A DNA stretch of 64,000 nucleotides from the sequence record ON529860.1; one strand, given 5' to 3'. Position numbers and translations under genes: made by a program. This document shows, piece after piece, positions 12,633 through 63,120 of this stretch (the first letter of the stretch is position 1; every line of letters begins with the position of its first letter). Under the pieces are notes generated by a model, which was not told the origin of the DNA, did no database searches, and was given only the letters and a program-made list of their open reading frames with translations.

Positions 12633-12673
12633 TTGTTAACCATATTGGCGATGAATGTCAACATTCCCGGCAA
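12633..12673 (-). promoter_or_regulatory. Promoter with an upstream TTGCC-N7 element
   Basis: TTGCC-N7-TTGACA-17 nt-TAACAA. Confidence 0.6.
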
Positions 12674-20770: not shown

Positions 20771-20775
20771 GGCGC

Positions 20776-20816
20776 ACTATAAGCAGGGTTTCGACTTTTG
20801 TCAATAACTACGGCAG
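20776..20816 (-). promoter_or_regulatory. Strong sigma70-type promoter with an upstream TGCC-N7 element
   Basis: CTGCC-N7-TTGACA-17 nt-TATAGT. Confidence 0.85.
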
Positions 20817-20822
20817 AAAAAT

Positions 20823-21182
20823 CTAACGCCCGAAGCGGAAAAAGCGGCGCAGGGGGGATTCCGTCTCGCGCTTGTATTGCTCGGCGTAGTCGGCCTTGCG
20901 CTTCTTGGTCTCTCCGACCGTGTCATGGCAATCCGCCCAGGCGCCGTGAAGATCACGGTCGTAGGCGGCCTTGTCTTCGTCCAGGCGCGGCTGACCCGGC
21001 GCGGGGCGCGCGGGCACGACCGGCTCGTCCCGGCACTCGGTGATCGAGTCCGGGTAGAGGCTGTCAGGGGACAACAACACCGTCGGGCTGCTTGCGCAGG
21101 CCGTCAGCAGCAGGCTGGTCGCCAGCAGGAGCGCCGCCAGTCGGGCGGGCTTGCGCTTCCGCGCGTCGGTCGAGGGCTTCAT
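20823..21182 (-). CDS. Outer-membrane spanin (Rz1-like lipoprotein)
   Basis: Basic N-region, hydrophobic core, lipobox LTAC and a Pro-rich mature part; overlaps the i-spanin in another frame. The ATG is at 21182. Confidence 0.8.
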   Translation of the reverse strand: MKPSTDARKRKPARLAALLLATSLLLTACASSPTVLLSPDSLYPDSITECRDEPVVPARPAPGQPRLDEDKAAYDRDLHGAWADCHDTVGETKKRKADYAEQYKRETESPLRRFFRFGR

Positions 21183-21597
21183 CTTGGGCTCCGTGATAAT
21201 CGGGACGTTCGGCGGCGATGCCGTCGAGCGCGGCGTCGTGCTTGCGGCCCTGGGGGGCCTGTTCAATCCGCTCGGTGATGCGGTCGTTCTGGGAGCGGCG
21301 GACGTCGCGTTGCGCGGCGCGACGCGCTTGCGACTTCTGGGCGTCCTGATCCGCCTGGGCCTGGCGGGCGGCGCCGGCGATCTGCGCCTCAAGGGCGTCC
21401 GCGCGCTTCTCCGAGTGTGCGAAGGCCAGGACCGCCAGCACCAGACCGAGAATGAACCAGGTCCGGATGTCGGAGGCGATCTTGATGACGAAGGCGGGTC
21501 CGACCGTGAACCACAATGCGACCACGGCGGCGCAGACCGCCGCGATCGTCCACAGGGTGGCGGGGTTCAGCAGAAGGGCCAGAAGGATGGAGAACAT
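21064..21597 (-). CDS. Inner-membrane spanin (Rz-like)
   Basis: N-terminal TM segments followed by an Ala/Gln/Arg-rich coiled coil; lies in the lysis cassette. Confidence 0.75.
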   Translation of the reverse strand: MFSILLALLLNPATLWTIAAVCAAVVALWFTVGPAFVIKIASDIRTWFILGLVLAVLAFAHSEKRADALEAQIAGAARQAQADQDAQKSQARRAAQRDVRRSQNDRITERIEQAPQGRKHDAALDGIAAERPDYHGAQDEALDRRAEAQARPTGGAPAGDQPAADGLRKQPDGVVVP

Positions 21598-22058
21598 CAG
21601 CGCTTGAACGTCACAGGATGGATGCCCTGACGATACCCCGAGCCGTTATAGGTCAGGTTCTGGCGACGCATCCGGGGATTGAAGGAGATGTGGACCCACC
21701 AGGAGCCGTTGGGCTTGCGCTCGTGGATCAACTGGTCGTAGTCCAGTTCCGAGGCGGCGATCTCGCGACAGATCGCCAGCGGATCACCAAAGCCGGGGCA
21801 GGTGAAGTCGACCGCCCAGCCCAGGGCGTGGTCGGAGTTGGGCACGCCGCCGACGGCGCGGTTGACGGCCGGATTGCGGTAGGCCGAGTTGACCCGGATG
21901 GCGTTGTCACCCAGCACCCAGCGCACCTGCTCCATCCGCTGAGCGGTCTGGCGCATGTTCTCCAGGTGGGCTGGGGTCGGCATGTTGTCGTTGCGCAGAC
22001 GAGCGGCGGTGTCTGACCGCACAAACTCTGCAAGCGTGAAATGGTCAGACAGACGCAT
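21597..22058 (-). CDS. Peptidase M15A family Zn peptidoglycan peptidase
   Basis: LSDHFTLAEF, NSAYR-x3-VNRAVGG, SDH-x3-WAVD and WVHISF. Confidence 0.9.
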   Translation of the reverse strand: MRLSDHFTLAEFVRSDTAARLRNDNMPTPAHLENMRQTAQRMEQVRWVLGDNAIRVNSAYRNPAVNRAVGGVPNSDHALGWAVDFTCPGFGDPLAICREIAASELDYDQLIHERKPNGSWWVHISFNPRMRRQNLTYNGSGYRQGIHPVTFKR

Positions 22059-22579
22059 CAGTCCGTCACCCCCGTGTCCGAGGCCTTGTCGTCATCGACA
22101 GAGGGCATGGGGCGTCCGCCCCGGAAATCATTGCGGCCGCCGAACCCGCCGTAGCCGCCCCCGAAGCCGCCACCGCTGTAATCGTCGTCTTTCTTGCCGC
22201 CGCCGAAGCCGTAGTCGACGTTGCGCGAGGTGGACGGATCGACGTCAGGATCATCGGCGGTGGTGACCAGGGTCAGGCCGGCGCCGCCCGGCCCCTTCAG
22301 CGACAGGCCCTTGATCGTGCCCAGCATCGAGATGATGACCAGGGCGAACAGGCCCAGGAAGATGTAGCCGTAGTTGATCAGGCCGGTGATGATCTGGGTC
22401 TGGAGGCCGTTGTATTCGGCCGTGTAGGTCACGGCGAACCAGACCAGCACGATGATCATGCCGACGAACAGCGGGAACAGCGACATGCCCGACAGGATGA
22501 TCGACACGCGCTGGAGATGGTCCGGGCGATCGCACAGGACGTCCATGGTGTCGCGCATCCAGCGGAAGAAGCGGCTCAT
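22058..22579 (-). CDS. Probable holin (2 TM with a hydrophilic C-tail)
   Basis: Two hydrophobic helices; lies between the endolysin and the spanins. The ATG is at 22579. Confidence 0.65.
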   Translation of the reverse strand: MSRFFRWMRDTMDVLCDRPDHLQRVSIILSGMSLFPLFVGMIIVLVWFAVTYTAEYNGLQTQIITGLINYGYIFLGLFALVIISMLGTIKGLSLKGPGGAGLTLVTTADDPDVDPSTSRNVDYGFGGGKKDDDYSGGGFGGGYGGFGGRNDFRGGRPMPSVDDDKASDTGVTD

Positions 22580-22626
22580 GTTGTGTCGCAGCCGCAGCGG
22601 CGACGGGGTCGTCGGCCAGCGGGGCA

Positions 22627-23235
22627 TTAGCGGTAGGACCAGGCGGTCTGGAGCGACTGGGCGGCGGGGTGGCCGCCGTAAACCATCAGTTCGGCCAGGC
22701 GGCGGCGATAGAGCCCCAGCGCCCACTTGCCGTTGGCGTTGGACCAACGGGCGAAGGCGATCTGGATGTTGACAGGTTCAGCCTTGGCCTTGGACTGCGC
22801 CGCCAGGCCCGACATGGAGATGTTGCCGACCTTGCGCGCGCCCTGGGCGTGCAGGCGCGCCACGGCGGACGAGCGGAAGCCGGCGGTGCCGATGTTGAAG
22901 CACATGGAGACCATGGCGTCGAATTCGCCCTGGTAGGTGCGGGCGTCCGCGATGCGGTTGACCTCGGCGACGTAGCGCTTGAGGTCGTCGGTCAGCAGGG
23001 CGTCGGCCTCGGCGACGGTGATGCGCTGCTTGCCGAACATCCGCTGCATGGCTTCGCGGGTCAGTTGGTCGGCGCGGGCGCGGCCGAAGATGTCGTAGTC
23101 GATGATCTGGCCCGACGGGGTCGTCAGGGCGTGGCCCCAGCCGATCGTGGAGACGTGGGCCGAGCAGTAGTAAGGCTCGGCCTCGAACTGCTCGGTGGAC
23201 TGAATCAGCTTCAGCCCTTCCGAGGAAATTTGCAT
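22627..23235 (-). CDS. Endolysin, GH24 phage lysozyme
   Basis: ISSEGLKLIQSTE, E-x8-C-x5-T triad, TIGWGH, FDAMVSMCFNIG and GLYRRRLAE. Confidence 0.9.
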   Translation of the reverse strand: MQISSEGLKLIQSTEQFEAEPYYCSAHVSTIGWGHALTTPSGQIIDYDIFGRARADQLTREAMQRMFGKQRITVAEADALLTDDLKRYVAEVNRIADARTYQGEFDAMVSMCFNIGTAGFRSSAVARLHAQGARKVGNISMSGLAAQSKAKAEPVNIQIAFARWSNANGKWALGLYRRRLAELMVYGGHPAAQSLQTAWSYR

Positions 23236-23271
23236 TGTAGTGGAGACACGGGCTGTCAAAAAGTCTGGCAG

Positions 23272-23300
23272 ATTGTGCCAGACTTATTGACATTCGTCAA
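23272..23300 (-). promoter_or_regulatory. Probable lysis-cassette promoter
   Basis: TTGACG-17 nt-CACAAT, within an AT-richer intergenic region containing the dyad TTGAC-ATTC-GTCAA. Confidence 0.5.
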
Positions 23301-25580: not shown

Positions 25581-25662
25581 GGGTCCCCTCTGTCAACGAT
25601 CGCCGTCCCGACCCGTTTAGAGGTCTGGACGGCGATGTCAATGGGGACGGCAGTGAACGCCG

Positions 25663-27860: not shown

Positions 27861-30800
27861 CAGACCGACCCCAGGTCGCCGAACAGGGTCCAGACATCGG
27901 TATCGGTCTTCAACAGAGACGCGACAGAATGCTTCTTGCGCAGGTCGGTCGTCACATCGTCAGGATACTCCAGCGTCACCCCGGAGCCAGCCAGGACGGT
28001 CACCGTGCCGTCGCCCGCACGTTGCAGGGACACAGAGGCTCCGATCGGGAAGGCCACGGCGCTGTTGGGCGGCACCGTCACGACGCTCGGCGAGGCCGAG
28101 TCGATCTTGCGGTGACCTTGACGATCCGCCAAGGTCAGGGTGTAGCTGGTGGTTGCGCTGACCGCGATCGTCAGCAAGTCCTGCCGCTGCGGCGCCTGGG
28201 ACTCCCACATGCCGTTCTTGAACGTCAGCAGGTGGCCGTCGGCGGGCGTCATCCCCGTCTTGACGTTCGTCAACTCGGACAGCGCCAGGCCAGGATTGTA
28301 ACGCGCCCAGTCCCCGGCGCCCGCCGCGCTCAGCATGATCGCGGCGTAGCCCGCATGAGTCGGCGAGGTGAACGTGGCGTCCGGAGAGATCGCCGTGTTC
28401 GGCGCGACCACGGCGCTGGCGGTCGCATAGCTGCGGTTGGCGCTGGCCGAGGGCAGGCTGCCTTGAGCCAACTGGGTCCAGGGGGCGTCAGCCGTCGCCG
28501 CCGTGGTGGACTCTCGGCCGACGTACAGGGACAAGGCCAGGGCCGAAGCGGCGCCGCTGGTCATGGCGGCGCCCGTCCAGGACGGCGCGCTGGTGTAGGT
28601 GGGATCGCTGGCCCACGACACCGCGACAATACCGTCGATGCCGCTCGTCAATCCCGCGATCTCATAGACGGCAAGGGCGCCGGCGGCGATCACCGAGGGG
28701 GACGAAGCCGTCACGAACGGCGACAACGAAGCCGTGTCGCCCGACACCTGTCGATAGGCGATGGCGGGGCGGATGCGATCCCCGGTAGCGGGCGCGCCCG
28801 GCAGCATGGTCCAGCCCGTGTTGGCCGTCGGGGTCGTCTGGTCGCTCATCAAGGCGATCAGCCAGTTCCCTGCTTGAGGCGTGGCCGGCAGGGTGACGGA
28901 CGGCACGAAGGCGGTCGCCGTGGAGTAGACCCCGATCAAGGCCTGCTGGACGATCTCCGGCGCGGCGAGCGGGACACCCTGTTGATAGATTTTCCCCGTG
29001 CTCTCGTCGACATAGAGAGAGGAGGCCGGCTTGGCCGCCGTCGGGACCCCGGACCCCGAGCCGATTTGCGCCTGGTCCAGGAACAGACGTGCGTCACGCG
29101 ACGGTTCGGACGTCCATTCGCCGTCCCGGTAGGTCAGCACCTCGCCTTGAGCCGGCGCGCCCAGGTTGACGTCCGTCAGTTCGCCCAGGGCCGGCACGCC
29201 GCCCGACGAGGCGGGCAGGTTATGGGCGCCCCAGACCCCATCCTTATAGGTCAGGACCTGATCGGCGAGCGGCGCCGAGGCGAAGTCGACGTCGGTCAAT
29301 TCATCCAGAACGACGGGCAGGGCGCGCCATTCATCGCCCGTTCCCGGCGTTTCAGTCGTCCCCTCCAGCAGGCAGAGGTAGAGCACGCCATCGTGATAGA
29401 CGGTGTCTCCCGACAGGTAGGGACGGGTCGAAAAGACGGTGTTGCAGCGAATATAACTGATCCGCACGTCGTCCGAACCGCCGACGAAGTTGCCGTCTTT
29501 CGAGTAGCGCAGCCGGATGGCGTGCGTGCCCGGCGACAACGTCGTCGTGAAGGTCTTGAACGGGTTCGCCGGTCCGCCGTCAGACAGCACCTGAGTGCCG
29601 TCAACGAAGACACGGAAGACGTCGGACGCCGTGCTCTCGCTTTGCACCCGATAGCGGATCACGAGATCGGGATGCGCGGCATCCGCCTCGACCGTGAAGG
29701 TGAACTCCGTCGCCCCATTGTGCGGAATGACCGGAGACTTCAGGACCTTGGTGTAGGGCGCGTCCTCCTGAGCGACGACCGCCCAGCCTGCCGAGTAGGC
29801 GTTGGCGAACAACGCCGGGGGCGTGGCCTCGAAATCGTAGGTTACATAGTCGGAGGCGACGCCGAACTCGCCGCGATGCTGCGGCACCGAAGTGCCGCCG
29901 AAGGGCAGGAACTCCAGCCCCTGACCATCTTCGCGCACGCCGACGACCTTGCCGCCGTGCCCCGTATAGGTGTCCGGGGTGTCGATCAGGCGGTTGAACG
30001 CAATACGGTCGGTCGATCCGATGTTGAAGGTGGTGACGGCCGCCCAGCCGTTCGCCGTTCCGCCTGAGTAGGCGGTGGTCCAGGTCGTCCCGTCGTCGGA
30101 ATACTGCACATCCCACGAAATCGCCCCCGTCCGCGTGCTCGACGTCGTCATGGCGACGTAGCCGATCTCGACCGGCTCGACGAAGTCATAGCGCAGCCAT
30201 GATCCCTCGCTGGCGTTGAAGGTCGACTGCCAGGCGGTCGCGGGGTCGGCGTCGAAAGCCTTGTCGGCGGACCACGTACTGCCTCGGGACGAACTGGCGG
30301 ACGCCGTTCCGCCCGTCGCCAACTGCGGGCCGCCCGCGACCTTGGTCATCACCACATCGCGCACGGTGATGTAGTCCGCCACCGCCGTGTGATAGAGGAT
30401 GCGCCAGCGCGCGTGTGCGCCGAAAGACAGCATGGGCTTGATGCCGACCGGGGCCGCCTTCCAGGCGCCGCCTTGATAGGTCAGGACGTGTTCCGGCGGG
30501 GTGCCCGTGACGGTCAAATCGACGTCGGTAAGATCGTCCAGTTGCTGCACCGGAGACACATATTCCAAGGCCGTGCCGGTGGCGTTGACCCGAACGGCCT
30601 TGCCCGGCTGAGCGCTCATAGGGCCAGGGCCGTCGCCCAGTCGAGCGAACAGTTCCGTCGACAGAGACGGCGCGAGTTCAAGAACCGCGCCGGCGGTCCA
30701 CGGCGGTTGCACCGTCGTCCAGGCGGTCGTCCAGGTCGTGCCGTTGTCGTCCGAATACTGGACGGCGATCGTCGTCGGGGTCGTTCTCGCCGTATGCGGG

Positions 30801-33800
30801 GTCAGTGTCACATGACCCACGGCCACTGGCGCGGCGAAGGCGTAGCGCAGCCAGGAGCCTTCGTTCGCGCCCGAACCGTTCTGCCAGTAGGTCGCCGGAT
30901 TGTTGTCGAAGGCGTTGGCCGCGTTGTTGCTCAGCCACGTCGTGGACGCAGTCGCCGTTCCGCCGACCGCCAACTGCGGACCCCCGATCGCGGCGCACAT
31001 CACGACTTCGCGGGCCGTGATGAACTGACCGGCGGTCGTGGCGTAATAGACCAGGCGCCAGTCCTTGTGCGCGCCGTAGGTGGGCTTGGACGATTCGGAG
31101 GTCCAGGCCCCCCCGCGATACGTCAACCGGTCGCCCGCTTGCGGGGCTCCAGCAGAGAAATCGACGTCGTCCAGTTGCGCGAGGTTCTGTGCGCCGCCTT
31201 CCCCCTCAGTGAGGAAGCGTTTCCAGGTCGGCTCCAGGTTTTCACCGTAGAGATGCTCGGCGTCGAAGTAGATCACCGCATAGGCCCACAACGGAGACCC
31301 TGCGCCCAGGGACGCCGTCAGGGTGGCGTCGCTGCTCGGCGTGAACGCGCCCGCCCCCGCGACCGCCATCGCTTGAGCGGCGTCGCTGTCCGTGACCGTC
31401 GTCAGCCCGTATTCTCCCGAAAGGGAGCCGGCGGTCGTCCCGCCCTTCTCGAACAGGGCGCCGATGGCGAAGGTATAGGGGCTCGTCGCGGGGGCCGTAT
31501 AGGCGGCGGCGGAGAAGGCGCCCGAGGCGGACCCTGCCATGAAGGCCGTCTGATAGAAGTCCCCCCAGGCGGCGCCCAGGCCGGACACCTCATGCACCGC
31601 GAAGGCGTCTTCGGGGCTGGCGGCGGCCGTGATCGGCAGCGGATGGGCCTCCGATCCGTCGATCTTCCGATAGGCGACCGTAACGTTGATGTCGGTCCCC
31701 GGCGCCGAATCAACGACCGTCCAGATCGAATCCAGCGTCACCGGACCAGCGGTGCCCGCCGCATAGAACAGGACCAGCCAGTTGTCGGTCTGGATTTGTT
31801 CGTAGTTCCAGGTCAACGGTCCCGCGTTGGGCGAGACAAAGCCCCAGGACTGTTCGAACTTGGGGGCCAGGCGCGGCGTGGCGCGCGACACGTAAAGGTC
31901 GCCGGGGTCGTGACGCATGTAGAGCGAACCGGAGGCTTCGCCCCAGTCCGGCGCCCCGGAGCCCGATTCAATCCGACGGCCATCATAGATATAGATGGGG
32001 TATTCGCCGCCGGGACCCGTGCCGCCGTCCGGCGTGCGGGCCTCCCAGTAACCGCTGCCCTCAACCCCGGTGTCGATCCAGGTCAAGACCTGGCCGTTGG
32101 AGGGATAGGGCGGCTGGCGCACGTCATCCAGCATGCTCAGGCGCATCCGGCGCGAGCGCCACACGCCACCGACGTCGGGAACGTTGACGTAGGTCAGCAC
32201 CTCGCCGAACACCGGCGAAGGCTCCGTCAGATCGACATCGTCGAGGTCGTTCAGGGTCAGCGGGACCGCCGTGGGATTCTCCGCCTGCCAGACGCCGTCC
32301 TTGAAGGTCAGCAGTTGTCCCGCCGTCGGCGGCGTGTCGAACTCGACGTCCGTCAGGTCATTGAGGACCTGCGGCACCGTCGGCGGCGTGACGAACTCCA
32401 GTCCGCTGGCGTCGGCCTTGACCTGAACCTGCTTGCCGCCCTGGCCCACATAGGTGTCGGGGGTGTCGGCATCGTCAAGGAAGCTGGTGGTCAGTCCGGG
32501 CCGCGTATAGACTCGGGTCTGCGACGCCGTCCAGCCGGTCTGATTCGTCGCACCCCAGGCCTCGAACCACGACGCACCGTCGTCGGAATACTGGACCCGG
32601 AAGACTTCAGGCGAGTAGTTGGGCGCCCAGCCGGCGACGGACGAGGCGGTGAGGGTGATTTCCTGAAGCGAGACCGGAGCCGCGAAGTGATAACCGATCC
32701 AGGCGTCCGGCAGATAGGCGGTCCAGATGTCGCCGGTCGTGCCGTCGAAGGCGCCGTTGGTGTTGCCGCCCGTGCCGATCGCCGTCCCGCCGGTCGCCAT
32801 CTGAGGCCCGCCCGGCACGCCGCGCATCACCACTTCGGCCACGACGACGGTGGTCGTGCCGGGGTAGGCGGCGGTGTCGTCCACCACCACGCGCCAGTAG
32901 GCGTGTCGACCGTAATCGCCCGGCGACGCCAGTGGCACCCATTTGCCGGCCCGACGGCCCAAGAGGTCTCCGTCTTGCTGTCCGGTGGTGTCGGCGTCCG
33001 TCAGGTCGTTCAGCGCCAGTTCGGTGTCGCCCGTCGCATCCTTGGCCGACCACTCCCCGTCGGTGTAGGTCAACACCTGGCCGTTGACCGGAGCCGGGTT
33101 CATGTTGACGTCGGAGAGTTCGCCCAGGGTCGAGGCCGGCGGCGTGAAGGGGACGTATTCCAGCTTGGTGCCGTCTTCGTTGACGCGCACGATCTTGCCG
33201 GCGTGGCTCGTCATGGCCCCCGGCGAATCCGAAAGCTGGGCGAACGAAAGCTTCGCCCGCGTCGGCACGGTCTCCATCACCTCCGCCGCCGTCCAGCCGA
33301 AGGAGCGTTCTTCGCTCCAGGCGGTGATCCAGGTCACCCCGGCGTCATCCGAGAACTGGACGTCCCAGGAGACCGGCAGTTGGCGCAGGGACGCCGGCGT
33401 CAGCGTGATCGCGTTGACTTCGACAGGATCAATGAAGGTGTATCGCAGCCAGGCCTTGTCGGCGGCGACAGCGGGCGCGCGCCAGTAGGTGGCGGGGTCG
33501 GCGTCGAAGGCCTTGTCAGCCGCCCAGTCGGGCATGGTCTCGGCGTTGGAGGTCGGAATGCCGCCTTCCGCCAGTTGCGGCAGGCCCGCGCCCGCGCGCA
33601 TGACCACTTCAGTGATTTCCATCACCTGGTCGGTCGAGGTCCGGAAGTAGAGCCGCCAGTCGCGGTGCTCGCCGAAGCGGAGGCCCTCGCCCGCGATGGG
33701 CTGGGCCGGGGCGTAAATCCAGGAGCCGTCCCAGTAGGTCAGCAGATCGCCGTTCAGCGGCGTTCCGGCCGAGAAGTCGACGTCGGTCAGATCATCCAGG

Positions 33801-35524
33801 GATTGCGGGATCGCGGCGGCCACCGAGGGCTGCGGCGTCCAGAACCCACCCTTGTAGGTCAGGACATAGTCCTCGGTCGGCGCCGGGGTCTCGTAGAGGA
33901 CGTCCGTCAACTCTTCGAGGCGAGTCGCACCGCCGCCGGTCGCCGGCACAGGCTCCGAGCCCCAGACGCCGTCCCGATAGGTCAGCACCTCGCCCGGTGC
34001 CGGATCGACGATGGTGACGTCGGTCAGTTGGTCGAGGGTGGTCGCGCCGCCGCCGCCGCCCGAGGGGGCGGGCACGAAGATCAGTCCCGTGCCCGCCGGG
34101 TTGACGGCGACGAACTTGTTCTGGGCGTTCTGGTAATTGGCGGGAGTGTCGGTCAGACCGATAAAGGCGACGTCCACCGCGTTGAGGACGTATTCGAAGC
34201 CATCCTCGTTGCCGTTGACGCGAACGAAGCGTCCTCCGGCGCCGGCCATGGAGGCGACGCCGACCATTTCGGTGATCGAGGGCCGCACATACTCCAGCGC
34301 CGTGCCGTTGGCGTTGACGCGCAGATAGCGCAGGGCGGACGCCGCCGCCATGGCGCCGGGACCGTCCGAGAGGTCCGCCAACTTCAGGCGACCGAAAACC
34401 ATGCCGCTCTGGGCCGAGTTGACCCGCAGCACCATGCCCGCCGCGTCCGTGTAGACGTTGGGGGTGTCCGAGAGTTCAGTCAGACGCAGGGAGCCGAAGA
34501 TCAGTCGGTCTTCATCCGGACCGACGCGCGCCATTCTGCCGGCCTGGCCCGTGAAGCTGTTCGGCGTATCCAACAGTTCGGTGAAATTGACGGGGCCGCC
34601 GGTCCCCGGCGCATACTCCCAGCCCGTGCCGGCGGCGTTGACGCGCAGATAGGTGAGGGCGTCGCCGAAGTCGGGGGCGCCGGGTCCGTCCGTCAGATCA
34701 GCGACCTTCGGCATGCCGAACTGGACGCCGTTGTTGGTCGCATTGACCAGGAGGTATTTGCCGGCCTGGCCGGCGTAGGAGTTCGGGAAGTCCGAGTTCT
34801 CGCGCAGGTAGGGCGTGGCGTAGGTCAGGCCCGTGCCGTTGGCGTTGACCACGACGTGCCGGTTCGCGGCGCCAGTGTAGCTGTTGGGAGTGTCGTCCAG
34901 ATCAACGAAAGAATTGACGTTGGCGGCCGAGGAGACGAACTCCAGGCGCGTGCCGGCGGCGTTGACCGCCACCAGGCTGCCCGCGTTGCCCGCGAGCGTG
35001 CTCGGCGTGTCCGTCAACTGGGCGAACGACATCGCCAGCGTCCACGGATTCCAGGTATTGGTAGCGGCGCTGTAGCGCAGCAGTTGGCCGTCGGTCGGCA
35101 GGCCCGACACGTCGGACAGATCGCGCAGCAGTCCCATGCCCGAAATCGGGTCCGGCACCACGAAACGCACATCGTTTCCGTCCGACACCACCAGGCCGAT
35201 CCGGTTGGCGGGCAGTTCCGCCGACAGACCCGTGCCAGCGACCTTGACCACGACCGAGGCCGTGCCCTGGTTTTCGATGGCGAACCAACGGGGCGTCGCC
35301 GGGACCGTCACCGTCCGCGCCGCCGTATGTCCGGCGAACTGAAGCAGGAAATACTTGGTGAACTGATCGGTGTTGAGGGTGACGTCGCCCGCCGCCAGCG
35401 ACACCGACAGCGTATCGTTCATCGCCGCTTCGAGAATGGCGATCGCGGTGTTGATCGTCGCCTCCTTCTGCTCCTGGTTGGCGGCGACCTGGGGCAGGTG
35501 GAGAATCGGGGTGTAGTCGGTCAT
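27860..35524 (-). CDS. Giant (2554 aa) tail fibre / receptor-binding protein
   Basis: DUF2793-like N-terminus (TPILHLPQVAANQEQKEATIN), many L-x2-L-x-DV spacer repeats, four discoidin/F5-8C-like modules and a CBM5/12-like motif. Confidence 0.85.
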   Translation of the reverse strand: MTDYTPILHLPQVAANQEQKEATINTAIAILEAAMNDTLSVSLAAGDVTLNTDQFTKYFLLQFAGHTAARTVTVPATPRWFAIENQGTASVVVKVAGTGLSAELPANRIGLVVSDGNDVRFVVPDPISGMGLLRDLSDVSGLPTDGQLLRYSAATNTWNPWTLAMSFAQLTDTPSTLAGNAGSLVAVNAAGTRLEFVSSAANVNSFVDLDDTPNSYTGAANRHVVVNANGTGLTYATPYLRENSDFPNSYAGQAGKYLLVNATNNGVQFGMPKVADLTDGPGAPDFGDALTYLRVNAAGTGWEYAPGTGGPVNFTELLDTPNSFTGQAGRMARVGPDEDRLIFGSLRLTELSDTPNVYTDAAGMVLRVNSAQSGMVFGRLKLADLSDGPGAMAAASALRYLRVNANGTALEYVRPSITEMVGVASMAGAGGRFVRVNGNEDGFEYVLNAVDVAFIGLTDTPANYQNAQNKFVAVNPAGTGLIFVPAPSGGGGGATTLDQLTDVTIVDPAPGEVLTYRDGVWGSEPVPATGGGATRLEELTDVLYETPAPTEDYVLTYKGGFWTPQPSVAAAIPQSLDDLTDVDFSAGTPLNGDLLTYWDGSWIYAPAQPIAGEGLRFGEHRDWRLYFRTSTDQVMEITEVVMRAGAGLPQLAEGGIPTSNAETMPDWAADKAFDADPATYWRAPAVAADKAWLRYTFIDPVEVNAITLTPASLRQLPVSWDVQFSDDAGVTWITAWSEERSFGWTAAEVMETVPTRAKLSFAQLSDSPGAMTSHAGKIVRVNEDGTKLEYVPFTPPASTLGELSDVNMNPAPVNGQVLTYTDGEWSAKDATGDTELALNDLTDADTTGQQDGDLLGRRAGKWVPLASPGDYGRHAYWRVVVDDTAAYPGTTTVVVAEVVMRGVPGGPQMATGGTAIGTGGNTNGAFDGTTGDIWTAYLPDAWIGYHFAAPVSLQEITLTASSVAGWAPNYSPEVFRVQYSDDGASWFEAWGATNQTGWTASQTRVYTRPGLTTSFLDDADTPDTYVGQGGKQVQVKADASGLEFVTPPTVPQVLNDLTDVEFDTPPTAGQLLTFKDGVWQAENPTAVPLTLNDLDDVDLTEPSPVFGEVLTYVNVPDVGGVWRSRRMRLSMLDDVRQPPYPSNGQVLTWIDTGVEGSGYWEARTPDGGTGPGGEYPIYIYDGRRIESGSGAPDWGEASGSLYMRHDPGDLYVSRATPRLAPKFEQSWGFVSPNAGPLTWNYEQIQTDNWLVLFYAAGTAGPVTLDSIWTVVDSAPGTDINVTVAYRKIDGSEAHPLPITAAASPEDAFAVHEVSGLGAAWGDFYQTAFMAGSASGAFSAAAYTAPATSPYTFAIGALFEKGGTTAGSLSGEYGLTTVTDSDAAQAMAVAGAGAFTPSSDATLTASLGAGSPLWAYAVIYFDAEHLYGENLEPTWKRFLTEGEGGAQNLAQLDDVDFSAGAPQAGDRLTYRGGAWTSESSKPTYGAHKDWRLVYYATTAGQFITAREVVMCAAIGGPQLAVGGTATASTTWLSNNAANAFDNNPATYWQNGSGANEGSWLRYAFAAPVAVGHVTLTPHTARTTPTTIAVQYSDDNGTTWTTAWTTVQPPWTAGAVLELAPSLSTELFARLGDGPGPMSAQPGKAVRVNATGTALEYVSPVQQLDDLTDVDLTVTGTPPEHVLTYQGGAWKAAPVGIKPMLSFGAHARWRILYHTAVADYITVRDVVMTKVAGGPQLATGGTASASSSRGSTWSADKAFDADPATAWQSTFNASEGSWLRYDFVEPVEIGYVAMTTSSTRTGAISWDVQYSDDGTTWTTAYSGGTANGWAAVTTFNIGSTDRIAFNRLIDTPDTYTGHGGKVVGVREDGQGLEFLPFGGTSVPQHRGEFGVASDYVTYDFEATPPALFANAYSAGWAVVAQEDAPYTKVLKSPVIPHNGATEFTFTVEADAAHPDLVIRYRVQSESTASDVFRVFVDGTQVLSDGGPANPFKTFTTTLSPGTHAIRLRYSKDGNFVGGSDDVRISYIRCNTVFSTRPYLSGDTVYHDGVLYLCLLEGTTETPGTGDEWRALPVVLDELTDVDFASAPLADQVLTYKDGVWGAHNLPASSGGVPALGELTDVNLGAPAQGEVLTYRDGEWTSEPSRDARLFLDQAQIGSGSGVPTAAKPASSLYVDESTGKIYQQGVPLAAPEIVQQALIGVYSTATAFVPSVTLPATPQAGNWLIALMSDQTTPTANTGWTMLPGAPATGDRIRPAIAYRQVSGDTASLSPFVTASSPSVIAAGALAVYEIAGLTSGIDGIVAVSWASDPTYTSAPSWTGAAMTSGAASALALSLYVGRESTTAATADAPWTQLAQGSLPSASANRSYATASAVVAPNTAISPDATFTSPTHAGYAAIMLSAAGAGDWARYNPGLALSELTNVKTGMTPADGHLLTFKNGMWESQAPQRQDLLTIAVSATTSYTLTLADRQGHRKIDSASPSVVTVPPNSAVAFPIGASVSLQRAGDGTVTVLAGSGVTLEYPDDVTTDLRKKHSVASLLKTDTDVWTLFGDLGSV

Positions 35525-47609: not shown

Positions 47610-47650
47610 TTGATGCCACGTCGGGACCTGTTCGTCAAGATTTCCGGCAA
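47610..47650 (-). promoter_or_regulatory. TTGCC-N7-TTGACG element upstream of the Dit genes
   Basis: Matches the motif; the -10 (CATCAA) is weak. Confidence 0.5.
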
Positions 47651-58003: not shown

Positions 58004-58044
58004 ACCCTACTCGAAAAGACCTTCAATGTCAAGATTTCAGGCAT
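58004..58044 (-). promoter_or_regulatory. Tail tube promoter with an upstream TGCC-N7 element
   Basis: ATGCC-N7-TTGACA-17 nt-TAGGGT. Confidence 0.75.
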
Positions 58045-59982: not shown

Positions 59983-60003
59983 TCTGGGAAAGTGCTCCGA
60001 TTA

Positions 60004-60032
60004 GAGTCACGCTTCGTAGGGAAACGTGACTC
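60004..60032. promoter_or_regulatory. GAGTCACG-N13-CGTGACTC dyad
   Basis: Same arms and spacing as the dyad at 56063-56091; intergenic. Confidence 0.6.
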
Positions 60033-60033
60033 C

Positions 60034-60861
60034 TTAACGCGCCGCAGAGTGCACGAAACCGGGCAAACTGTCAAGGTTTCCGTGGCCCGCCGCCTGGGCT
60101 TCCTGAGCCGCCTTGCGCACGCGGTTGCGGTGCGAGATGGCCTTGACCCACTTCTTCGCCATTTCCGAACGGACCACGTCGTCCTCGGTGAACTCGACGA
60201 TGTCCATGATCTCCCAGTCGTCGGAGATGTTGACGATCTCTTCCAGGCCGGAGTTGTGGATGTCGATCTGCGAGTGGTCGCCGGCGACGACGACCTGGGT
60301 GCCGTTGCCCGTGCGGGTCAGCAGCAGGTAGAGGTCGTCGAACTCGGCGTTCTGGGCTTCGTCCAGGATGACGCAGGCGTTGTCGAAGGTGCGGCCGCGC
60401 ATGTATTCGAACGGCACGATCTCGAACTTGCCCTCCGACTTCCACATTTCCAGTTGGGTCTTGGAGACCTCGGCGCGGATGCCCTCGATGACCGGCGTCA
60501 GCCAGGGCGCCATCTTGGCTTCGATGTTGCCCGGCAGGAAGCCGATCTGGTGTCCCTTCTTGGAGGCGGTCACCCGGCTGATGATGATCTTTTCGATGTC
60601 GCCCTTGAGCATGCGCTGGGCGGCGATCCGGGCGGCGAGGTAGGTCTTGCCCGTGCCCGCCGGGCCGATGGCGAAGACCGAATCGCCTTCCTTCAGCACT
60701 TCCAGGTAGTCCGCCTGGTTCTCGGTCTTGGGGACCAACGGCTTGGCCGTGTGCTTGGTCTGCTTGGCGGAGCGTTCTGCGCGGCGAGCCGCGCGTGCCT
60801 GAGCCTTGGTGAGGGGCCGTTCGTGCATCGGTTCGAACGGGGTGTAGGCGGGTTCAGTCAA
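60034..60861 (-). CDS. phoH: PhoH family ATPase
   Basis: GPAGTGKT, GFLPG, PFEYMRGRTF, ILDEAQN, GDHSQID and DVVRS. Confidence 0.93.
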   Translation of the reverse strand: MTEPAYTPFEPMHERPLTKAQARAARRAERSAKQTKHTAKPLVPKTENQADYLEVLKEGDSVFAIGPAGTGKTYLAARIAAQRMLKGDIEKIIISRVTASKKGHQIGFLPGNIEAKMAPWLTPVIEGIRAEVSKTQLEMWKSEGKFEIVPFEYMRGRTFDNACVILDEAQNAEFDDLYLLLTRTGNGTQVVVAGDHSQIDIHNSGLEEIVNISDDWEIMDIVEFTEDDVVRSEMAKKWVKAISHRNRVRKAAQEAQAAGHGNLDSLPGFVHSAAR

Positions 60862-60888
60862 GCAACTGTCCTGGGCTATGGCTGGGTC

Positions 60889-61140
60889 TCAGCCGGATGT
60901 GGCCTCCAGACGGATCGCGCTGGCGGCCTGACAGTGGAGAAGGTTGGAGCGGAAATGCTCCACCAGTTCTCCGAGGATCGCCATGCTTTCGGGAGTGAGG
61001 TCCTCCAGGAGCATGTCGTTCATCGCGGCGGCGCCGCGAATCATGTCCATGTGCCGGGCTTCGATGTCCGCGCTGGGCGACTCCACCGCCTGGACGAATG
61101 CCGCCACGGGCGGGAACGTAGGAGCGAGTGCGGCGTTCAT
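60889..61140 (-). CDS. Hypothetical protein
   Basis: Has an SD-like sequence upstream and fits the operon. Confidence 0.6.
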   Translation of the reverse strand: MNAALAPTFPPVAAFVQAVESPSADIEARHMDMIRGAAAMNDMLLEDLTPESMAILGELVEHFRSNLLHCQAASAIRLEATSG

Positions 61141-61242
61141 CGGGGTTCCCTCAGAGGAAATGCTTAACTGAGGGGAACCTAACCCGACCTTAGGGTGTTG
61201 CGCAAGGACGGTCTGGGAACAATCCCCTACCGCGTGAGTGGT

Positions 61243-61689
61243 TTAGCCCGCTCCCGTAACCATGGTTACAATGGCGCCGACGACCGCCGCCAGCAGGGCC
61301 GAGCCCCCGGCGGTCAACGGACCGATGATGATCTCCATCCGCGTCAGGCGCTTTTCCAGCGCCAGCTTGTCGGCGGTGAACTCACGCTCCAGGCGGTCCA
61401 GTTCGTCCGCCGCCTCTTTTTCGACGCGGGCCGTTTCCTGGGCGGCGGCCTTGAGGTCGCGTTCCAGGTTGGCGATTTTCTGCGGCTGATCCTGAGCCTC
61501 GATGCGCGTCAGGCGATCGCGCACGTCCTTCATGTCTTCGCGGAATCCGTCGAAACGGGTGTCGACCTTGTCGACAAGCCGATCCATCTTGTCGTTGAGC
61601 GTCGTGAAGAGACGGTCCACGGCGTCGCGGAACCGGTCTTCGGGCGTCATGCCCACGGCCGGAATGGGAATGTTACCGGCCATCGACAT
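61243..61689 (-). CDS. Coiled-coil protein with a C-terminal TM helix
   Basis: Heptad-rich charged body and hydrophobic C-terminus; overlaps the PAS gene by 17 nt. Confidence 0.75.
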   Translation of the reverse strand: MSMAGNIPIPAVGMTPEDRFRDAVDRLFTTLNDKMDRLVDKVDTRFDGFREDMKDVRDRLTRIEAQDQPQKIANLERDLKAAAQETARVEKEAADELDRLEREFTADKLALEKRLTRMEIIIGPLTAGGSALLAAVVGAIVTMVTGAG

Positions 61690-62173
61690 AGACCTCCTCG
61701 ATCTGAGCGATGCCGCACACCGCGACCACGTCCCCGTTCACCATGATGGGCCACTTCCACCCCGCGAAGCGCAGCAGAGCGCCGCTGGAGGCATGCGGAA
61801 TGACGCCGTCGACCTGGATCGTGCGGCGCTCGATGACGCATTGGAGGTCTTCGTCCTCAAAGGCGCTGGCGTCGCCGTTGTCCCAGATGGCGTGATCCGG
61901 CTGCGCCAGGTAGTCGAGCGCGGTCACGCCCGTCATGGCGGTATAGGGTCGGTTGACGTGAACCATCACGAACGATCCGTCCGCTTGCAAGGCCTTGATC
62001 CAGGCCGGCAGGGGCATGTGTTCGAAGAAGCCCGTCATCAGGAGGCAAGGGTCCTCCGAACGGCACTCTTCGGCGGCGTCACGCAAAATGTTGAGCAGGG
62101 CTTCCACGTCTTGACGCGGTTTCTGCGGGATACCCGTCGGTTGGGCCGAAGGGCTGCTGTCGTTGTTCGACAC
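61673..62173 (-). CDS. Stand-alone PAS (PAS_4-like) domain protein
   Basis: FEHMPLPAWIK...VNRPY-x3-TG...D-x2-AF-x3-D-x2-C...KWPI-x2-NGDVVAVCGI follows the PAS/PAC consensus. Confidence 0.75.
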   Translation of the reverse strand: MSNNDSSPSAQPTGIPQKPRQDVEALLNILRDAAEECRSEDPCLLMTGFFEHMPLPAWIKALQADGSFVMVHVNRPYTAMTGVTALDYLAQPDHAIWDNGDASAFEDEDLQCVIERRTIQVDGVIPHASSGALLRFAGWKWPIMVNGDVVAVCGIAQIEEVYVDGR

Positions 62174-62214
62174 GGCCTTCGTCCCCGACGGTTAGCGCGT
62201 TGATATTGACGCGG

Positions 62215-62255
62215 AGGCTACGCGCAAACCCCTTGAAAGTCAAGATTTTTGGCAA
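62215..62255 (-). promoter_or_regulatory. PAS gene promoter with an upstream TTGCC-N7 element
   Basis: TTGCC-N7-TTGACT-17 nt-TAGCCT. Confidence 0.7.
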
Positions 62256-62297
62256 CGATTGCCAGCCAATAAATTCCTTGACGAAGCGCAGCGCCGG

Positions 62298-62397
62298 AAT
62301 CACAACGCCCCGCACCGGACGGGGGCCAGTGCGGGGCGCTGCTTGACGACGGAGGACCGCGTCAGCCGGACAAAGCCCCGTGGCTGACTGCGACGCT
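62298..62397 (-). ncRNA. Candidate ~100-nt two-hairpin small RNA
   Basis: Has its own promoter (TTGACA-17-TACATC at 62404-62432), stems GTCAGCC/GGCTGAC and CGCCCCGCAC/GTGCGGGGCG, and a linker containing CCUCC. Confidence 0.45.
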
Positions 62398-62449
62398 GTG
62401 CGGGATGTAGAGGACTGCGCGGTGCGTGTCAACCCTCTCGGTCAGATAA

Positions 62450-62530
62450 TGGCGGGGACGGAGGGAATCGAACCCCCTGGATGACGCCTTCGGAGGGCGT
62501 TGCCTACATTCCGGTCGGCACTTCGCCCCC
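62450..62530 (-). tRNA. tRNA-Arg(CCG), atypical long D-loop
   Basis: Acceptor GGGGGCG/CGUCCCC, anticodon arm ACGCC-CUCCGAA-GGCGU, UUCGA T-loop and encoded CCA. Confidence 0.8.
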
Positions 62531-62563
62531 GAGGCGGTGGGCCGGACAGGCCGGCAGAAAGAG

Positions 62564-62645
62564 TGGCGCCCAAGGCAGGATTTGAACCTGCGTTTGCAAC
62601 TCCGCTACGGATAAGGCCTTCGTAGGACCCCTCGGTTACTTGGGC
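62564..62645 (-). tRNA. tRNA-like element with an 11-nt anticodon loop (identity undetermined)
   Basis: Perfect acceptor GCCCAAG/CUUGGGC plus G-CCA and a perfect T-arm; the anticodon stem CUACG/CGUAG closes AAGGCCUUAUC. Confidence 0.7.
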
Positions 62646-62648
62646 ATT

Positions 62649-62732
62649 TGGCTCCTATGAGAGGACTCGAACCTCTAAGTCTTGCGACGGTCGATTAACA
62701 GTCGACTGCGTTTACCATTCCGCCACATAGGA
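62649..62732 (-). tRNA. tRNA-Asn(GUU) with a long variable arm
   Basis: UCCUAUG/CAUAGGA-G-CCA, anticodon arm GUCGA-CUGUUAA-UCGAC, and variable stem GUC-GCAA-GAC. Confidence 0.9.
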
Positions 62733-62757
62733 ACAAACTGAATACTGATATTTTACC

Positions 62758-62831
62758 TGGTTCTGGCTCTAGGAATCGAACCTAAATCTCGGAGACCAAA
62801 ACTCCGCGTGATACCGTTACACTAAGCCAGA
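62758..62831 (-). tRNA. tRNA-Gln(UUG)
   Basis: UCUGGCU/AGCCAGA, anticodon arm CGGAG-UUUUGGU-CUCCG, CCA. Confidence 0.88.
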
Positions 62832-62842
62832 TCAGGAAAACT

Positions 62843-62920
62843 TGGTAGGAGGTACTGGATTCGAACCAGTGAAATGTCGGTATGTGAAACCGATGCCTTG
62901 GGCCGCTTGGCGAACCTCCC
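62843..62920 (-). tRNA. tRNA-Val(CAC)
   Basis: GGGAGGU/ACCUCCU-A-CCA and anticodon arm UCGGU-UUCACAU-ACCGA; the body is Gln-like. Confidence 0.8.
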
Positions 62921-62964
62921 ATGCAAGAGCAGCGTATCTCCACCGCTCAGGGACAAAGTAAAGT

Positions 62965-63041
62965 TGGTCCTAGCACCAGGATTTGAACCTGGGACCGAGC
63001 GGTTATCGACCGCGCGCTCTACCAAACTGAGCTATGCTAGG
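62965..63041 (-). tRNA. tRNA-Ile(GAU)
   Basis: CCUAGCA/UGCUAGG-A-CCA; anticodon loop UCGAUAA has C33 in place of U33. Confidence 0.85.
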
Positions 63042-63045
63042 GCTG

Positions 63046-63120
63046 TGGTAGCGGATACAGGAATCGCACCTGTGCATGTCGGCGTGTCATACCGATGCCT
63101 TTCTACTTGGCTAATCCGCC
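63046..63120 (-). tRNA. tRNA-Val(GAC)
   Basis: GGCGGAU/AUCCGCU-A-CCA, anticodon loop AUGACAC, T-loop UGCGAUU. Confidence 0.8.

What the first reader, a model, noticed from the sequence alone, without database searches (positions are those of the whole stretch)
61243..62255. Phage-encoded stand-alone PAS sensor coupled to a membrane-anchored coiled-coil protein
Seen: a promoter bearing the TGCC-N7-TTGAC motif drives a 166-aa protein that is essentially one PAS/PAC domain, with no kinase or output domain. It overlaps a coiled-coil protein with a C-terminal TM helix, and phoH follows two genes later. Known: host cell-cycle kinases in Caulobacterales (CckA, DivL, PleC, DivJ) are regulated largely through PAS domains or partner binding. 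Inference: either a decoy that rewires host signalling, or a split sensor in which PAS senses a ligand and acts through the membrane partner, for example on lysis timing.
Basis: partly seen in the sequence, partly recalled or inferred. Interest (0 to 1): 0.65.

Follow-up and report, generated by a model that had tools for sequence, protein, structure and literature searches.

The report
Phage PAS sensor with membrane-anchored partner
A giant Brevundimonas phage carries a small PAS-type sensor protein whose gene overlaps that of a membrane-anchored coiled-coil protein. In smaller phages that partner sits at the head of the cell-bursting (lysis) genes, so the pair may let the phage time host lysis to the cell's internal state.

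Summary
The window is a Brevundimonas pondensis jumbo phage, 100% identical to Kabachok/Papperlapapp (Dolichocephalovirinae).

**The PAS protein.** Gene 61673-62173 (-) encodes a 166-aa protein with a real PAS fold and no output domain (AF2 pLDDT 80.6; 294 PDB matches, best NifL and LOV PAS). Residues 1-41 form a separate helical module.

**The partner.** Its gene overlaps that of a 148-aa protein predicted as one long helix ending in a C-terminal membrane anchor.

**Linkage.** The pair recurs in every sampled relative down to about 30% identity, including one phage with a different neighbourhood. About 45 of the 150 nearest relatives carry an N-terminal membrane anchor ahead of the PAS domain; the ten read through also have a coiled coil. 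One such fusion sits next to a holin.

**What the partner does elsewhere.** Without PAS, it is the first gene of holin-endolysin-spanin cassettes in temperate Brevundimonas phages. Caulobacter jumbo phages keep only a 54-56-aa remnant of the PAS protein's N-terminal module upstream of it.

**Best reading (~0.4).** A membrane-tethered cytoplasmic sensor that modulates holin triggering. The host-kinase decoy idea has no support: no related PAS in 61 Brevundimonas genomes. No earlier scan note covers this locus.

The parts
62239..62264 (-). Promoter-like element.
   Evidence: The motif is enriched 18 against 0.45 expected. The same palindrome-plus-TTGAC layout occurs at the other intergenic copies. 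The E. coli-type consensus scan finds no -10.
62307..62337 (-). Terminator-like GC-rich hairpin followed by a T-rich tail. It lies between the tRNA cluster and the PAS operon.
62051..62173 (-). N-terminal module of the PAS protein (residues 1-41): a disordered leader plus an amphipathic helix at 19-39.
   Evidence: The AF2 model places a helix at 19-39. The module is homologous to 54-56-aa ORFs that replace the PAS gene in Caulobacter-type jumbo phages (hhalign probability 87.8%, E 3.3e-6; BLASTP E 6e-4).
61673..62050 (-). PAS core (residues 42-166) plus the stop codon. The family signature is PxPAW[IL]K ... N ... G ... D ... D ... WKWP ... G.
61243..61689 (-). Tail-anchored coiled-coil membrane protein, 148 aa (alternative start at 61683). 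Its start overlaps the end of the PAS gene.
61255..61332 (-). C-terminal transmembrane helix of the partner (about residues 120-145). Only about three residues follow it.
   Evidence: A hydropathy scan of the homologues finds the same C-terminal segment. The segment is conserved in the family alignments.
60889..61140 (-). Conserved 83-aa soluble helical protein of unknown function. It travels with the partner and PhoH in jumbo phages.
60034..60861 (-). PhoH-like ATPase
20823..23235 (-). The phage's own lysis cassette, about 38 kb away: lysozyme 22627-23235, holin 22058-22627, M15 peptidase 21597-22058, i-spanin 21064-21597, o-spanin 20823-21080. The holin and peptidase are homologous to those that directly follow the partner gene in temperate phages.

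Best explanation
The two overlapping genes encode a two-part, membrane-tethered cytoplasmic sensor.

The 166-aa protein is a stand-alone PAS domain preceded by a 41-residue helical module. The 148-aa protein is one long coiled-coil helix held in the inner membrane by a C-terminal anchor, so its coiled coil faces the cytoplasm.

Inferred model:
- The N-terminal helix of the PAS protein packs against the partner's coiled coil. This reproduces, in two chains, the 'membrane anchor - coiled coil - PAS' layout that relatives encode as one chain.
- The partner family works with the phage's two-TM holin, as XhlA works with XhlB in PBSX and gp24.1 with gp26 in SPP1.
- The PAS domain therefore makes holin triggering, and so the time of lysis, depend on an intracellular cue. 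That cue could be a small ligand, or redox or energy state.

Shown here: the PAS fold, the helix-plus-anchor architecture, the conserved gene overlap, the fusions, and the lysis-cassette position of the partner family.

Inferred: binding, the link to the holin in this jumbo phage, and the nature of the signal.
For: **Fold.** AF2 pLDDT 80.6 with PAS topology. 294 PDB hits at E<=1e-3, the best being NifL-PAS and LOV. 12 of 14 members hit PAS_4. ESM Atlas neighbours are all PAS_4 clusters.

**Partner architecture.** A single helix over residues 16-145 with a C-terminal TM.

**Linkage.** The genes overlap by 4-17 nt in Kabachok, Kikimora, L003, L004 and the P0008 contig. The same holds for distant PAS relatives at 30-36% identity in L031 and L034/L035. 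It also holds in L032/L033, where the neighbours are a UvrD helicase and a Ro60/TROVE gene instead of PhoH. Those partners belong to the same family, sharing the signature D-x3-R-x2-RIE and the P-L-T anchor.

**Fusions.** Among the 150 best of 548 profile hits, about 45 carry an N-terminal TM ahead of the PAS domain; the ten read through also have a coiled coil. They lie on phage contigs.

**Lysis link.**
- The partner family, at 83-89% identity, directly abuts a two-TM holin (phrog_12666) in L007, L010/11, L015, L017 and L023. In L007, L010/11 and L023 an M15 endolysin and spanins follow within the locus.
- It lies 1-5 kb upstream of the holin in L014, L016 and L022.
- The jumbo phage's own holin and M15 peptidase are homologues of these (40% identity, E 5e-28; 47%, E 5e-41).
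- In L038 a fused TM-coiled-coil-PAS gene sits 58 nt upstream of a holin (phrog_3427 E 4e-25; Pfam GTA_holin_3TM).

**N-terminal module.** It is retained without PAS, still overlapping the partner gene, in CcrColossus-like contigs. In CcrBL9 it ends 3 nt before the partner gene.

**Precedent.** XhlA and gp24.1 have one C-terminal TM and co-operate with a two-TM holin (PMC6316719).
Against:
- In this jumbo phage the partner gene is not next to the holin. It lies 38 kb away, at the head of the PhoH/head-tail connector/tail operon.
- The partner is not a sequence member of XhlA (PF10779) or DUF7201.
- In L008/L009 and L022 the partner is followed by tail-fibre-like genes. No holin lies within the 5 kb held downstream in L008. 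A tail-related role therefore cannot be dismissed.
- Two of the three fused PAS genes examined (L036, L037) are not near a recognisable holin.
- The coiled coil of the fused proteins is not homologous to the partner family (hhalign E 0.56). The fusions are therefore an architectural analogy, not a strict Rosetta stone.
- No cofactor signature was identified. The invariant Cys and His residues of the close family are not conserved in the wider family.
Confidence: 0.4

Rival explanations
1. The partner is a morphogenesis or tail-associated factor, for example a membrane-anchored assembly platform or a fibre-related protein. The PAS protein would be its regulator or chaperone, and lysis is not the output.
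For: In all jumbo phages the pair heads the PhoH, head-tail connector and tail-tube operon. In temperate phages the partner always follows tail or fibre genes (Phage-tail_3, Gly_rich_2, DUF4376, DUF1353). In L008 and L022 it is itself followed by collagen-like and fibre-like genes.
Against: In L007 and L010 the stop and start codons share a base with the holin gene; in L015, L017 and L023 the tblastn matches to partner and holin abut within a few bases. A tail-anchored inner-membrane topology is unusual for a virion part. The pair also occurs away from any structural genes (L032), and a fused PAS gene abuts a holin (L038).
Confidence: 0.22
2. A membrane-tethered sensor serving another membrane process, not the canonical holin. 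Candidates are superinfection exclusion, control of membrane potential, or sensing or countering a host defence signal.
For: The module is mobile between very different neighbourhoods: PhoH/tail, helicase/Ro60, HNH/AAA, and epimerase/Big_9. Jumbo phages keep it apart from their lysis cassette.
Against: No match to PADLOC was sought, and no family hit points to exclusion or defence. The only recurrent functional neighbours found are holins.
Confidence: 0.2
3. One reading: the PAS protein mimics a PAS domain of a host cell-cycle kinase (CckA, DivL, PleC, DivJ) and rewires host signalling.
For: PAS domains mediate partner binding in Caulobacterales kinases (general knowledge). The protein has no output domain of its own.
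Against: The family profile finds no significant match in 61 Brevundimonas genomes (best E 0.07), nor in the two MAGs carrying partner prophages. The nearest relatives are small or membrane-tethered proteins; all those whose contigs were examined lie on phage contigs. Coupling to the membrane partner is conserved. Caulobacter jumbo phages dispense with the PAS core while keeping the N-terminal module.
Confidence: 0.07

Closest known systems
XhlA/XhlB of Bacillus subtilis PBSX and gp24.1/gp26 of phage SPP1 (two-component holins)
   Same: One small protein has a single C-terminal TM and a cytoplasmic helical part. It is encoded next to a two-TM holin and an endolysin, and co-production of the two is needed for killing (PMC6316719; PMC5589764). 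In temperate Brevundimonas phages the partner family abuts a two-TM holin in the same way.
   Different: There is no sequence membership: PF10779 finds nothing in the Kabachok genome. The host is Gram-negative and spanins are present. In the jumbo phage the gene is unlinked from the holin and is paired with a PAS protein instead.
T4 antiholins RI and RIII (lysis inhibition)
   Same: Accessory proteins that make holin triggering respond to a signal. RIII acts from the cytoplasmic side (PMC8385771 and PMC11413866).
   Different: These are unrelated proteins with no PAS domain. The T4 signal is superinfection sensed in the periplasm. Homology was not tested here.
Short stand-alone PAS/LOV proteins (PpSB1-LOV, RsLOV, DsLOV) and the NifL PAS domain
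   Same: They are the best structural matches. Each is a PAS core with flanking helices that signals through protein-protein contacts, not through a fused enzyme.
   Different: The LOV flavin-cysteine motif NCRFL is absent from the sequence. Identity is only 13-22%. The family has its own signature (PAW[IL]K, WKWP), and no cofactor is known.
VqmA of vibriophage VP882
   Same: A phage-encoded PAS-domain receptor that couples a small-molecule cue to the decision to lyse (PMC8284805).
   Different: VqmA carries a DNA-binding output and acts on transcription in a temperate plasmid-like phage. Here there is no DNA-binding domain, and the output is a membrane protein.
Phage proteins labelled 'PAS domain' in BFVD (uncultured Caudovirales, about 169-205 aa; Cellulophaga phages phi19:1 and phi18:3)
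   Same: Small phage-encoded PAS-fold proteins, and the best viral structural matches.
   Different: None is characterised. Sequence relation to this family was not tested.

Membership tests
PAS fold (Pfam clan PAS_Fold; PAS_4 PF08448) | Five-stranded antiparallel sheet with the intervening helices in PAS order. | tested here: met
   AF2 elements are E57-62, E68-73, H75-81, H93-96, H102-115, E119-126, E133-145 and E148-161. Foldseek gives 294 PDB hits at E<=1e-3, and all listed ones are PAS/LOV.
PAS fold (Pfam clan PAS_Fold; PAS_4 PF08448) | HMM score above the curated gathering threshold. | tested here: inconclusive
   The window protein scores 18.5 bits against a cut-off of 23.1. 12 of 14 close members hit at E<=0.1, best 5.7e-5. 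A fused relative passes: L038 scores 29.4 bits. PF08448 is also on record for the L032/L033 protein.
LOV photosensors | Flavin-binding motif with the adduct-forming cysteine (GxNCRFLQ) on helix E-alpha. | tested here: not met
   No such motif occurs in the protein or its 13 homologues. The E-alpha region reads D-Y-L-A-Q-P-D.
Sensor histidine kinase or other PAS-output fusion | A kinase, GGDEF, HTH or other output domain in the same chain. | tested here: not met
   Pfam, NCBIfam and PHROGs find no further domain in the 166 aa.
XhlA (PF10779) | Match to the family HMM. | tested here: not met
   No match at E<=10 anywhere in the Kabachok genome, and none in the Pfam scan of the protein.
XhlA-like holin partner (functional class) | A single C-terminal TM, a cytoplasmic helical N-part, and a gene adjacent to a two-TM holin and an endolysin. 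| tested here: inconclusive
   The architecture is met. Adjacency to the holin is met for temperate-phage homologues. It is not met for the window's own gene, which lies 38 kb from the holin.
XhlA-like holin partner (functional class) | Co-production with the holin is needed for, or changes, membrane lesion formation. | not testable with these tools
   Requires expression experiments.
DUF7201 (PF23831) | Match to the family HMM. | tested here: not met
   Suggested by ESM Atlas neighbours, but there is no match at E<=10 in Kabachok, CcrColossus or the L017 provirus.
Spanin (i-spanin) | An N-terminal TM with a periplasmic coiled coil, paired with an o-spanin lipoprotein. | tested here: not met
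   The TM is C-terminal and there is no signal sequence. Separate i- and o-spanins are present both in the temperate cassettes and in the window.

The most novel reading that the evidence does not exclude
A widespread, undescribed class of phage lysis-timing sensor. A cytoplasmic PAS domain is tethered to the inner membrane by a coiled coil, either split into two overlapping genes or fused into one. It reads an intracellular cue such as redox, energy, oxygen or a metabolite, and gates holin triggering through an XhlA-like partner. This would be the first cytoplasmic-signal-gated holin regulator. It is directly testable in seven cultured Brevundimonas phages.
Probability: 0.3. Interest if true: 0.8.

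Novelty: new variant of a known kind. Interest (0 to 1): 0.62.

Why it matters
How phages decide when to lyse, beyond simple holin accumulation, is known in detail only for T4-type lysis inhibition. Environmental sensing by phages is a current topic, as the VqmA and arbitrium systems show.

This locus offers a concrete and widespread candidate. The profile search returns 548 cluster representatives, mostly small or membrane-tethered proteins, and all contigs examined for them are phage-like. It points to a protein-level sensor acting at the membrane, and the partner family provides a link to holins.

The system is experimentally accessible: seven isolated phages on B. pondensis LVF1, and natural PAS-less comparators among the Caulobacter phages. 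Full-length PAS, N-terminal remnant only, and partner alone together form a natural deletion series.

Tried and rejected
**Complex prediction.** There is no verdict either way.

**Sequence searches that gave nothing.**
- Searches against PDB sequences gave only chance hits to superoxide dismutases, E>0.2.
- PHROGs and NCBIfam give nothing for the PAS protein.
- XhlA (PF10779) and DUF7201 (PF23831) HMMs find no match.
- Weak Pfam, PHROG and NCBIfam hits of the partner (Sec3_CC, tape measure, SMC and others) were rejected as generic coiled-coil noise.

**Origin from the host.** There is no significant match in two MAGs or in 61 Brevundimonas genomes.

**Surveys.**
- IMG/VR holds no close PAS relative. 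Single-protein scans with P0113 and P0108 found nothing.
- The wide alignment A6 was too diverse for pattern search.
- Among 50,697 phage records, only the seven Brevundimonas jumbo phages carry the PAS family.

**Homology tests that failed.**
- The coiled coil of the fused proteins against the partner family: none.
- The 72-aa ORF upstream of the partner in L008 against the N-terminal module: none.

**Promoter.**
- The E. coli-type sigma-70 scan finds nothing at the locus.
- I considered a sigma-54 reading of the TGGCA-N5-TGCC palindrome and rejected it, because the GG-to-GC spacing is two bases too short.
- I considered the motif as a 'late' promoter and rejected that. It also precedes ribonucleotide reductase, an exonuclease operon and an RNA gene.

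**Cofactor.** I considered heme or metal ligation by the invariant residues C43, H52, H72, C112 and C153 of the close family. They are not conserved in the wider family.

**Own genome.** No whole genome is held for the window, so the Kabachok record was searched instead.
Full report
**Identity of the window.** Window 60000-63000 is 100% identical to Brevundimonas phages vB_BpoS-Kabachok and vB_BpoS-Papperlapapp. These are jumbo siphoviruses of 356-357 kb in the Dolichocephalovirinae, with host B. pondensis LVF1. Identity is 99.5% to Domovoi and 94% to Marchewka and Bambus. The paper describing the isolates does not mention PAS, holins or promoters (PMC10070969). All four proteins of the locus are annotated 'hypothetical' except PhoH.

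**Check of the observation.** On the minus strand the order is as follows:
- five tRNA genes (62649-63120);
- a GC-rich hairpin with a T-rich tail (62307-62337);
- the motif TGCC-N7-TTGAC (62239-62254);
- a 166-aa ORF (62173-61673, GTG start);
- a 148-aa ORF (61689-61243), overlapping the previous one by 17 nt, or 11 nt from the annotated ATG;
- an 83-aa ORF (61140-60889);
- PhoH (60861-60034);
- head-tail connector genes and the tail tube gene.

The motif occurs 18 times in the window against 0.45 expected. Nine copies lie on the plus strand inside the large minus-strand tail gene (30.5-35.2 kb). They are the reverse complement of a coding repeat. The other nine are promoter-like and share a larger layout: an imperfect palindrome YGGCA-N5-TGCCR abutting the TTGAC. 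These copies precede the tail tube gene, a tail gene block, the lysis cassette, an RNA gene, an exonuclease operon and ribonucleotide reductase. The motif is therefore the phage's general promoter type and not a class-specific one.

**The 166-aa protein is a PAS fold plus an N-terminal module.**
- Pfam PAS_4 is below threshold (E 0.0025, 18.5 against 23.1 bits), but 12 of 14 family members hit it.
- With a 14-sequence alignment, AlphaFold2 gives pLDDT 80.6. The model has two N-terminal helices (19-39, 42-51) followed by the canonical PAS succession of strands and helices.
- Foldseek finds 294 PDB chains at E<=1e-3. The best are the FAD-PAS of NifL and many LOV and short-LOV proteins. The best viral models are small 'PAS domain' proteins of uncultured phages. 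ESM Atlas neighbours are all PAS_4 clusters.
- The LOV cysteine motif is absent, and there is no output domain.

**The partner.** The 148-aa protein is predicted as one continuous helix over residues 16-145 (pLDDT 84.6). Its last 25 or so residues are hydrophobic, and only about three residues follow them. With no signal peptide, this makes it a tail-anchored protein with a cytoplasmic coiled coil. Its family signature is D-V-R-x-R-L-x-R-I-E-A-x-D, then K-R-L-T-R-M-E just before a P-L-T-containing anchor.

**The pair is conserved far beyond this phage.**
- The word-based search found 13 close PAS homologues at 52-95% identity. Every context examined shows peptide deformylase, tRNAs, PAS, overlapping partner, a small ORF, PhoH, connectors and tail tube.
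- The exhaustive profile search found 548 cluster representatives at E<=1e-3, of which 55 are at E<=1e-10.
- Three distant small members were traced. L031 lies on a 279-kb contig, and L034/L035 are jumbo-phage-like with PhoH downstream. L032/L033 have a different neighbourhood: ribonucleotide reductase, RNase T and UvrD helicase upstream, and Ro60/TROVE downstream.
- In all three, the PAS gene is again overlapped by a gene of the same partner family, 97-135 aa long.
- In total, eight of eight PAS contexts keep the overlapping pair. This includes one where nothing else is shared, which argues for a functional unit and not inherited synteny.

**Fusions.** Among the 150 best representatives, 85 are small soluble proteins (median 159 aa) and 14 are large multidomain proteins. 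About 45 carry an N-terminal TM helix ahead of the PAS core (median 210 aa).
- The ten sequences read through also show a coiled coil of about 50-70 residues between the anchor and the PAS core.
- In the sequences read, acidic residues precede the anchor and basic residues follow it. This places the PAS domain in the cytoplasm.
- For several of these proteins the profile alignment runs back into query positions 14-40. Helix 19-39 of the phage protein therefore corresponds to the last part of the fused coiled coil.
- The fused coiled coil is not homologous to the partner family. The fusions support the architecture 'membrane tether - coiled coil - PAS' but not a strict gene-fusion event.
- The three contigs examined for fused genes carry phage-type genes. 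One fused gene matches phrog_31932, of unknown function.

**What the partner does elsewhere.** The partner family is much larger than the close PAS family: 75 clusters.
- In temperate Brevundimonas and Phenylobacterium phages and prophages, homologues of 83-89% identity are the first gene of a textbook lysis cassette. IMG/VR classes one of these contigs (L017) as a provirus.
- That cassette reads: partner, two-TM holin (phrog_12666), Peptidase_M15_3 endolysin (phrog_894), i-spanin, embedded o-spanin lipoprotein (phrog_12081). Partner stop and holin start share a base in L007 and L010.
- The partner directly abuts the holin in L007, L010/L011, L015, L017 and L023. It is 1-2 kb upstream in L014 and L016, and about 5 kb upstream with fibre-like genes between in L022. 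No holin is in range in L008/L009.
- The jumbo phage has its own cassette at window 20823-23235: lysozyme, holin, M15 peptidase, i-spanin, o-spanin. Its holin and peptidase are homologues of the temperate ones, but no partner gene lies beside them.
- Independently, the fused TM-coiled-coil-PAS gene of L038 lies 58 nt upstream of a holin of another family (phrog_3427 E 4e-25; GTA_holin_3TM).
- The arrangement 'single C-terminal-TM protein next to a two-TM holin' is that of XhlA/XhlB and SPP1 gp24.1/gp26. In those systems both proteins are needed for killing (PMC6316719; PMC5589764).
- By sequence the partner is neither XhlA nor DUF7201.

**PAS-less relatives keep the N-terminal module.** Caulobacter jumbo phages (CcrColossus, CcrPW, CcrBL9, CcrSC and others) have the partner, the small ORF and PhoH in the same place, but no PAS gene.
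- Immediately upstream of the partner they have a 54-56-aa ORF instead. It overlaps the partner's conserved long reading frame in CcrColossus-like contigs. In CcrBL9 it ends 3 nt before the partner gene.
- A profile of these ORFs aligns from residue 1 to residues 1-41 of the PAS family (hhalign probability 87.8%, E 3.3e-6).
- The metagenomic phage L034 has a partner 53% identical to CcrBL9 gp156 and carries a full PAS protein. The N-terminus of that protein aligns with CcrBL9 gp155 (E 6e-4).
- Since full PAS-partner pairs occur in several branches, loss of the PAS core in Caulobacter-phage lineages is the simpler history. This direction is inferred, not shown.
- The retention of residues 1-41 next to the partner is the best available hint that this helix is the contact with the partner.

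**Host decoy hypothesis.** The family profile finds no significant match in 61 Brevundimonas genomes (best E 0.07), nor in the two MAGs that carry partner prophages. The protein is thus not a recent copy of a host kinase PAS domain. Mimicry without sequence similarity cannot be excluded.

**Ligand.** The close family has the invariant residues C43, H52, H72, C112 and C153. Across 40 diverse members only P54, K60, N74, G82, D109 and K140 are invariant, and P56, W58, D93, P142 and G154 nearly so. No known cofactor signature was recognised. W58/K60 lie on strand A and K140/W141/P142 on strand H, and they could form a surface or pocket. I could not inspect model coordinates, so this remains speculation.

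**Mechanism proposed.**
- Shown: the PAS fold; the tail-anchored helix; the conserved overlapping pair across lineages and neighbourhoods; the analogous fused proteins; the partner family heading holin cassettes; a fused PAS gene next to a holin; and the N-terminal module conserved without PAS.
- Inferred: the PAS protein docks by its N-terminal helix on the cytoplasmic coiled coil of the partner. The partner co-operates with or restrains the two-TM holin. A cue sensed by the PAS core shifts holin triggering.
- I give about 0.4 to the whole chain. I give about 0.8 to 'the two proteins act together at the membrane' and more than 0.9 to the PAS fold.

**Rivals.**
- A morphogenetic or tail-related role for the partner (0.22).
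- Another membrane process such as exclusion or defence sensing (0.2).
- The host-kinase decoy (0.07).

**Comparison with what is known.** Phage-encoded PAS sensing is known for VqmA of VP882, which has a transcriptional output (PMC8284805). Signal-dependent lysis timing is known for T4 RI and RIII (PMC8385771 and PMC11413866). A full-text search pairing 'PAS domain' with antiholin or lysis timing listed no paper among the ten shown that links them. A large jumbo-phage comparative study does not mention PAS (PMC7824862). I therefore rate this a new variant of known kinds, with moderate to high interest because the system is cultured and testable.

**Limits.**
- No interaction prediction could be run.
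- Only a sample of contexts was examined: eight for the split pair, three for the fusions, and nine for the partner alone.
- No expression data were consulted.
- Nearby earlier notes of the scan do not cover this locus. One of them describes an RNA gene at 20151-20816, whose promoter is one of the motif copies seen here.

Noticed in passing
window 3596-3611, 12657-12672, 20800-20815, 23255-23291, 25637-25652, 47634-47649, 58028-58043, 62239-62264: The promoter-like copies of the motif share an imperfect palindrome YGGCA-N5-TGCCR directly upstream of the TTGAC. This is a candidate binding site for a dimeric regulator. At 23255-23291 a single palindrome is flanked by TTGAC on both strands, giving a divergent pair just upstream of the lysis cassette.
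   Followed up: partly
window 30574-35248 (+ strand hits inside the minus-strand tail gene): Nine of the 18 motif hits are antisense copies of a repeated coding unit (GTCAAC-N7-GGCA on the coding strand) in the 7.7-kb putative tail protein gene. They inflate the motif count and are not promoters.
   Followed up: partly
L005 3929-4423 (CcrColossus gp107) and L020, L018, L021: The annotated start of CcrColossus gp107 looks too far downstream. An upstream in-frame extension is conserved in L018 and L021, with the motif R-V-R-E-I-E-M-R-L-W-E-E. It makes the gene overlap the preceding 54-aa ORF.
   Followed up: partly
L032 5001-7560 and L033: In an unrelated phage contig, the PAS-partner pair sits between a UvrD-type helicase and a Ro60/TROVE-vWA gene. 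A phage-borne Ro60 homologue is unusual.
   Followed up: no
window 60889-61140: The 83-aa soluble helical protein between the partner and PhoH is conserved, at 34-50% identity, in jumbo phages with and without PAS. It has no family match, and its role in the module is unknown.
   Followed up: partly
window 22058-22627 (-): The similarity of the annotated 189-aa holin to the temperate-phage holins begins at its Met17. The true start may therefore be the internal ATG. Its C-terminal 50 residues are a Gly/Asp-rich tail absent from the temperate versions.
   Followed up: no
window about 23.3-60 kb against ON529852.1: The window-to-record offset differs by 9 bases between the lysis cassette (202463) and the PAS locus (202472). 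The window therefore carries a small indel relative to Kabachok somewhere in between.
   Followed up: no
L003 3726-3995 and the P0008 context: GapR-like DNA-binding genes (PF10073) lie a few genes upstream of the peptide deformylase in relatives of this phage.
   Followed up: no
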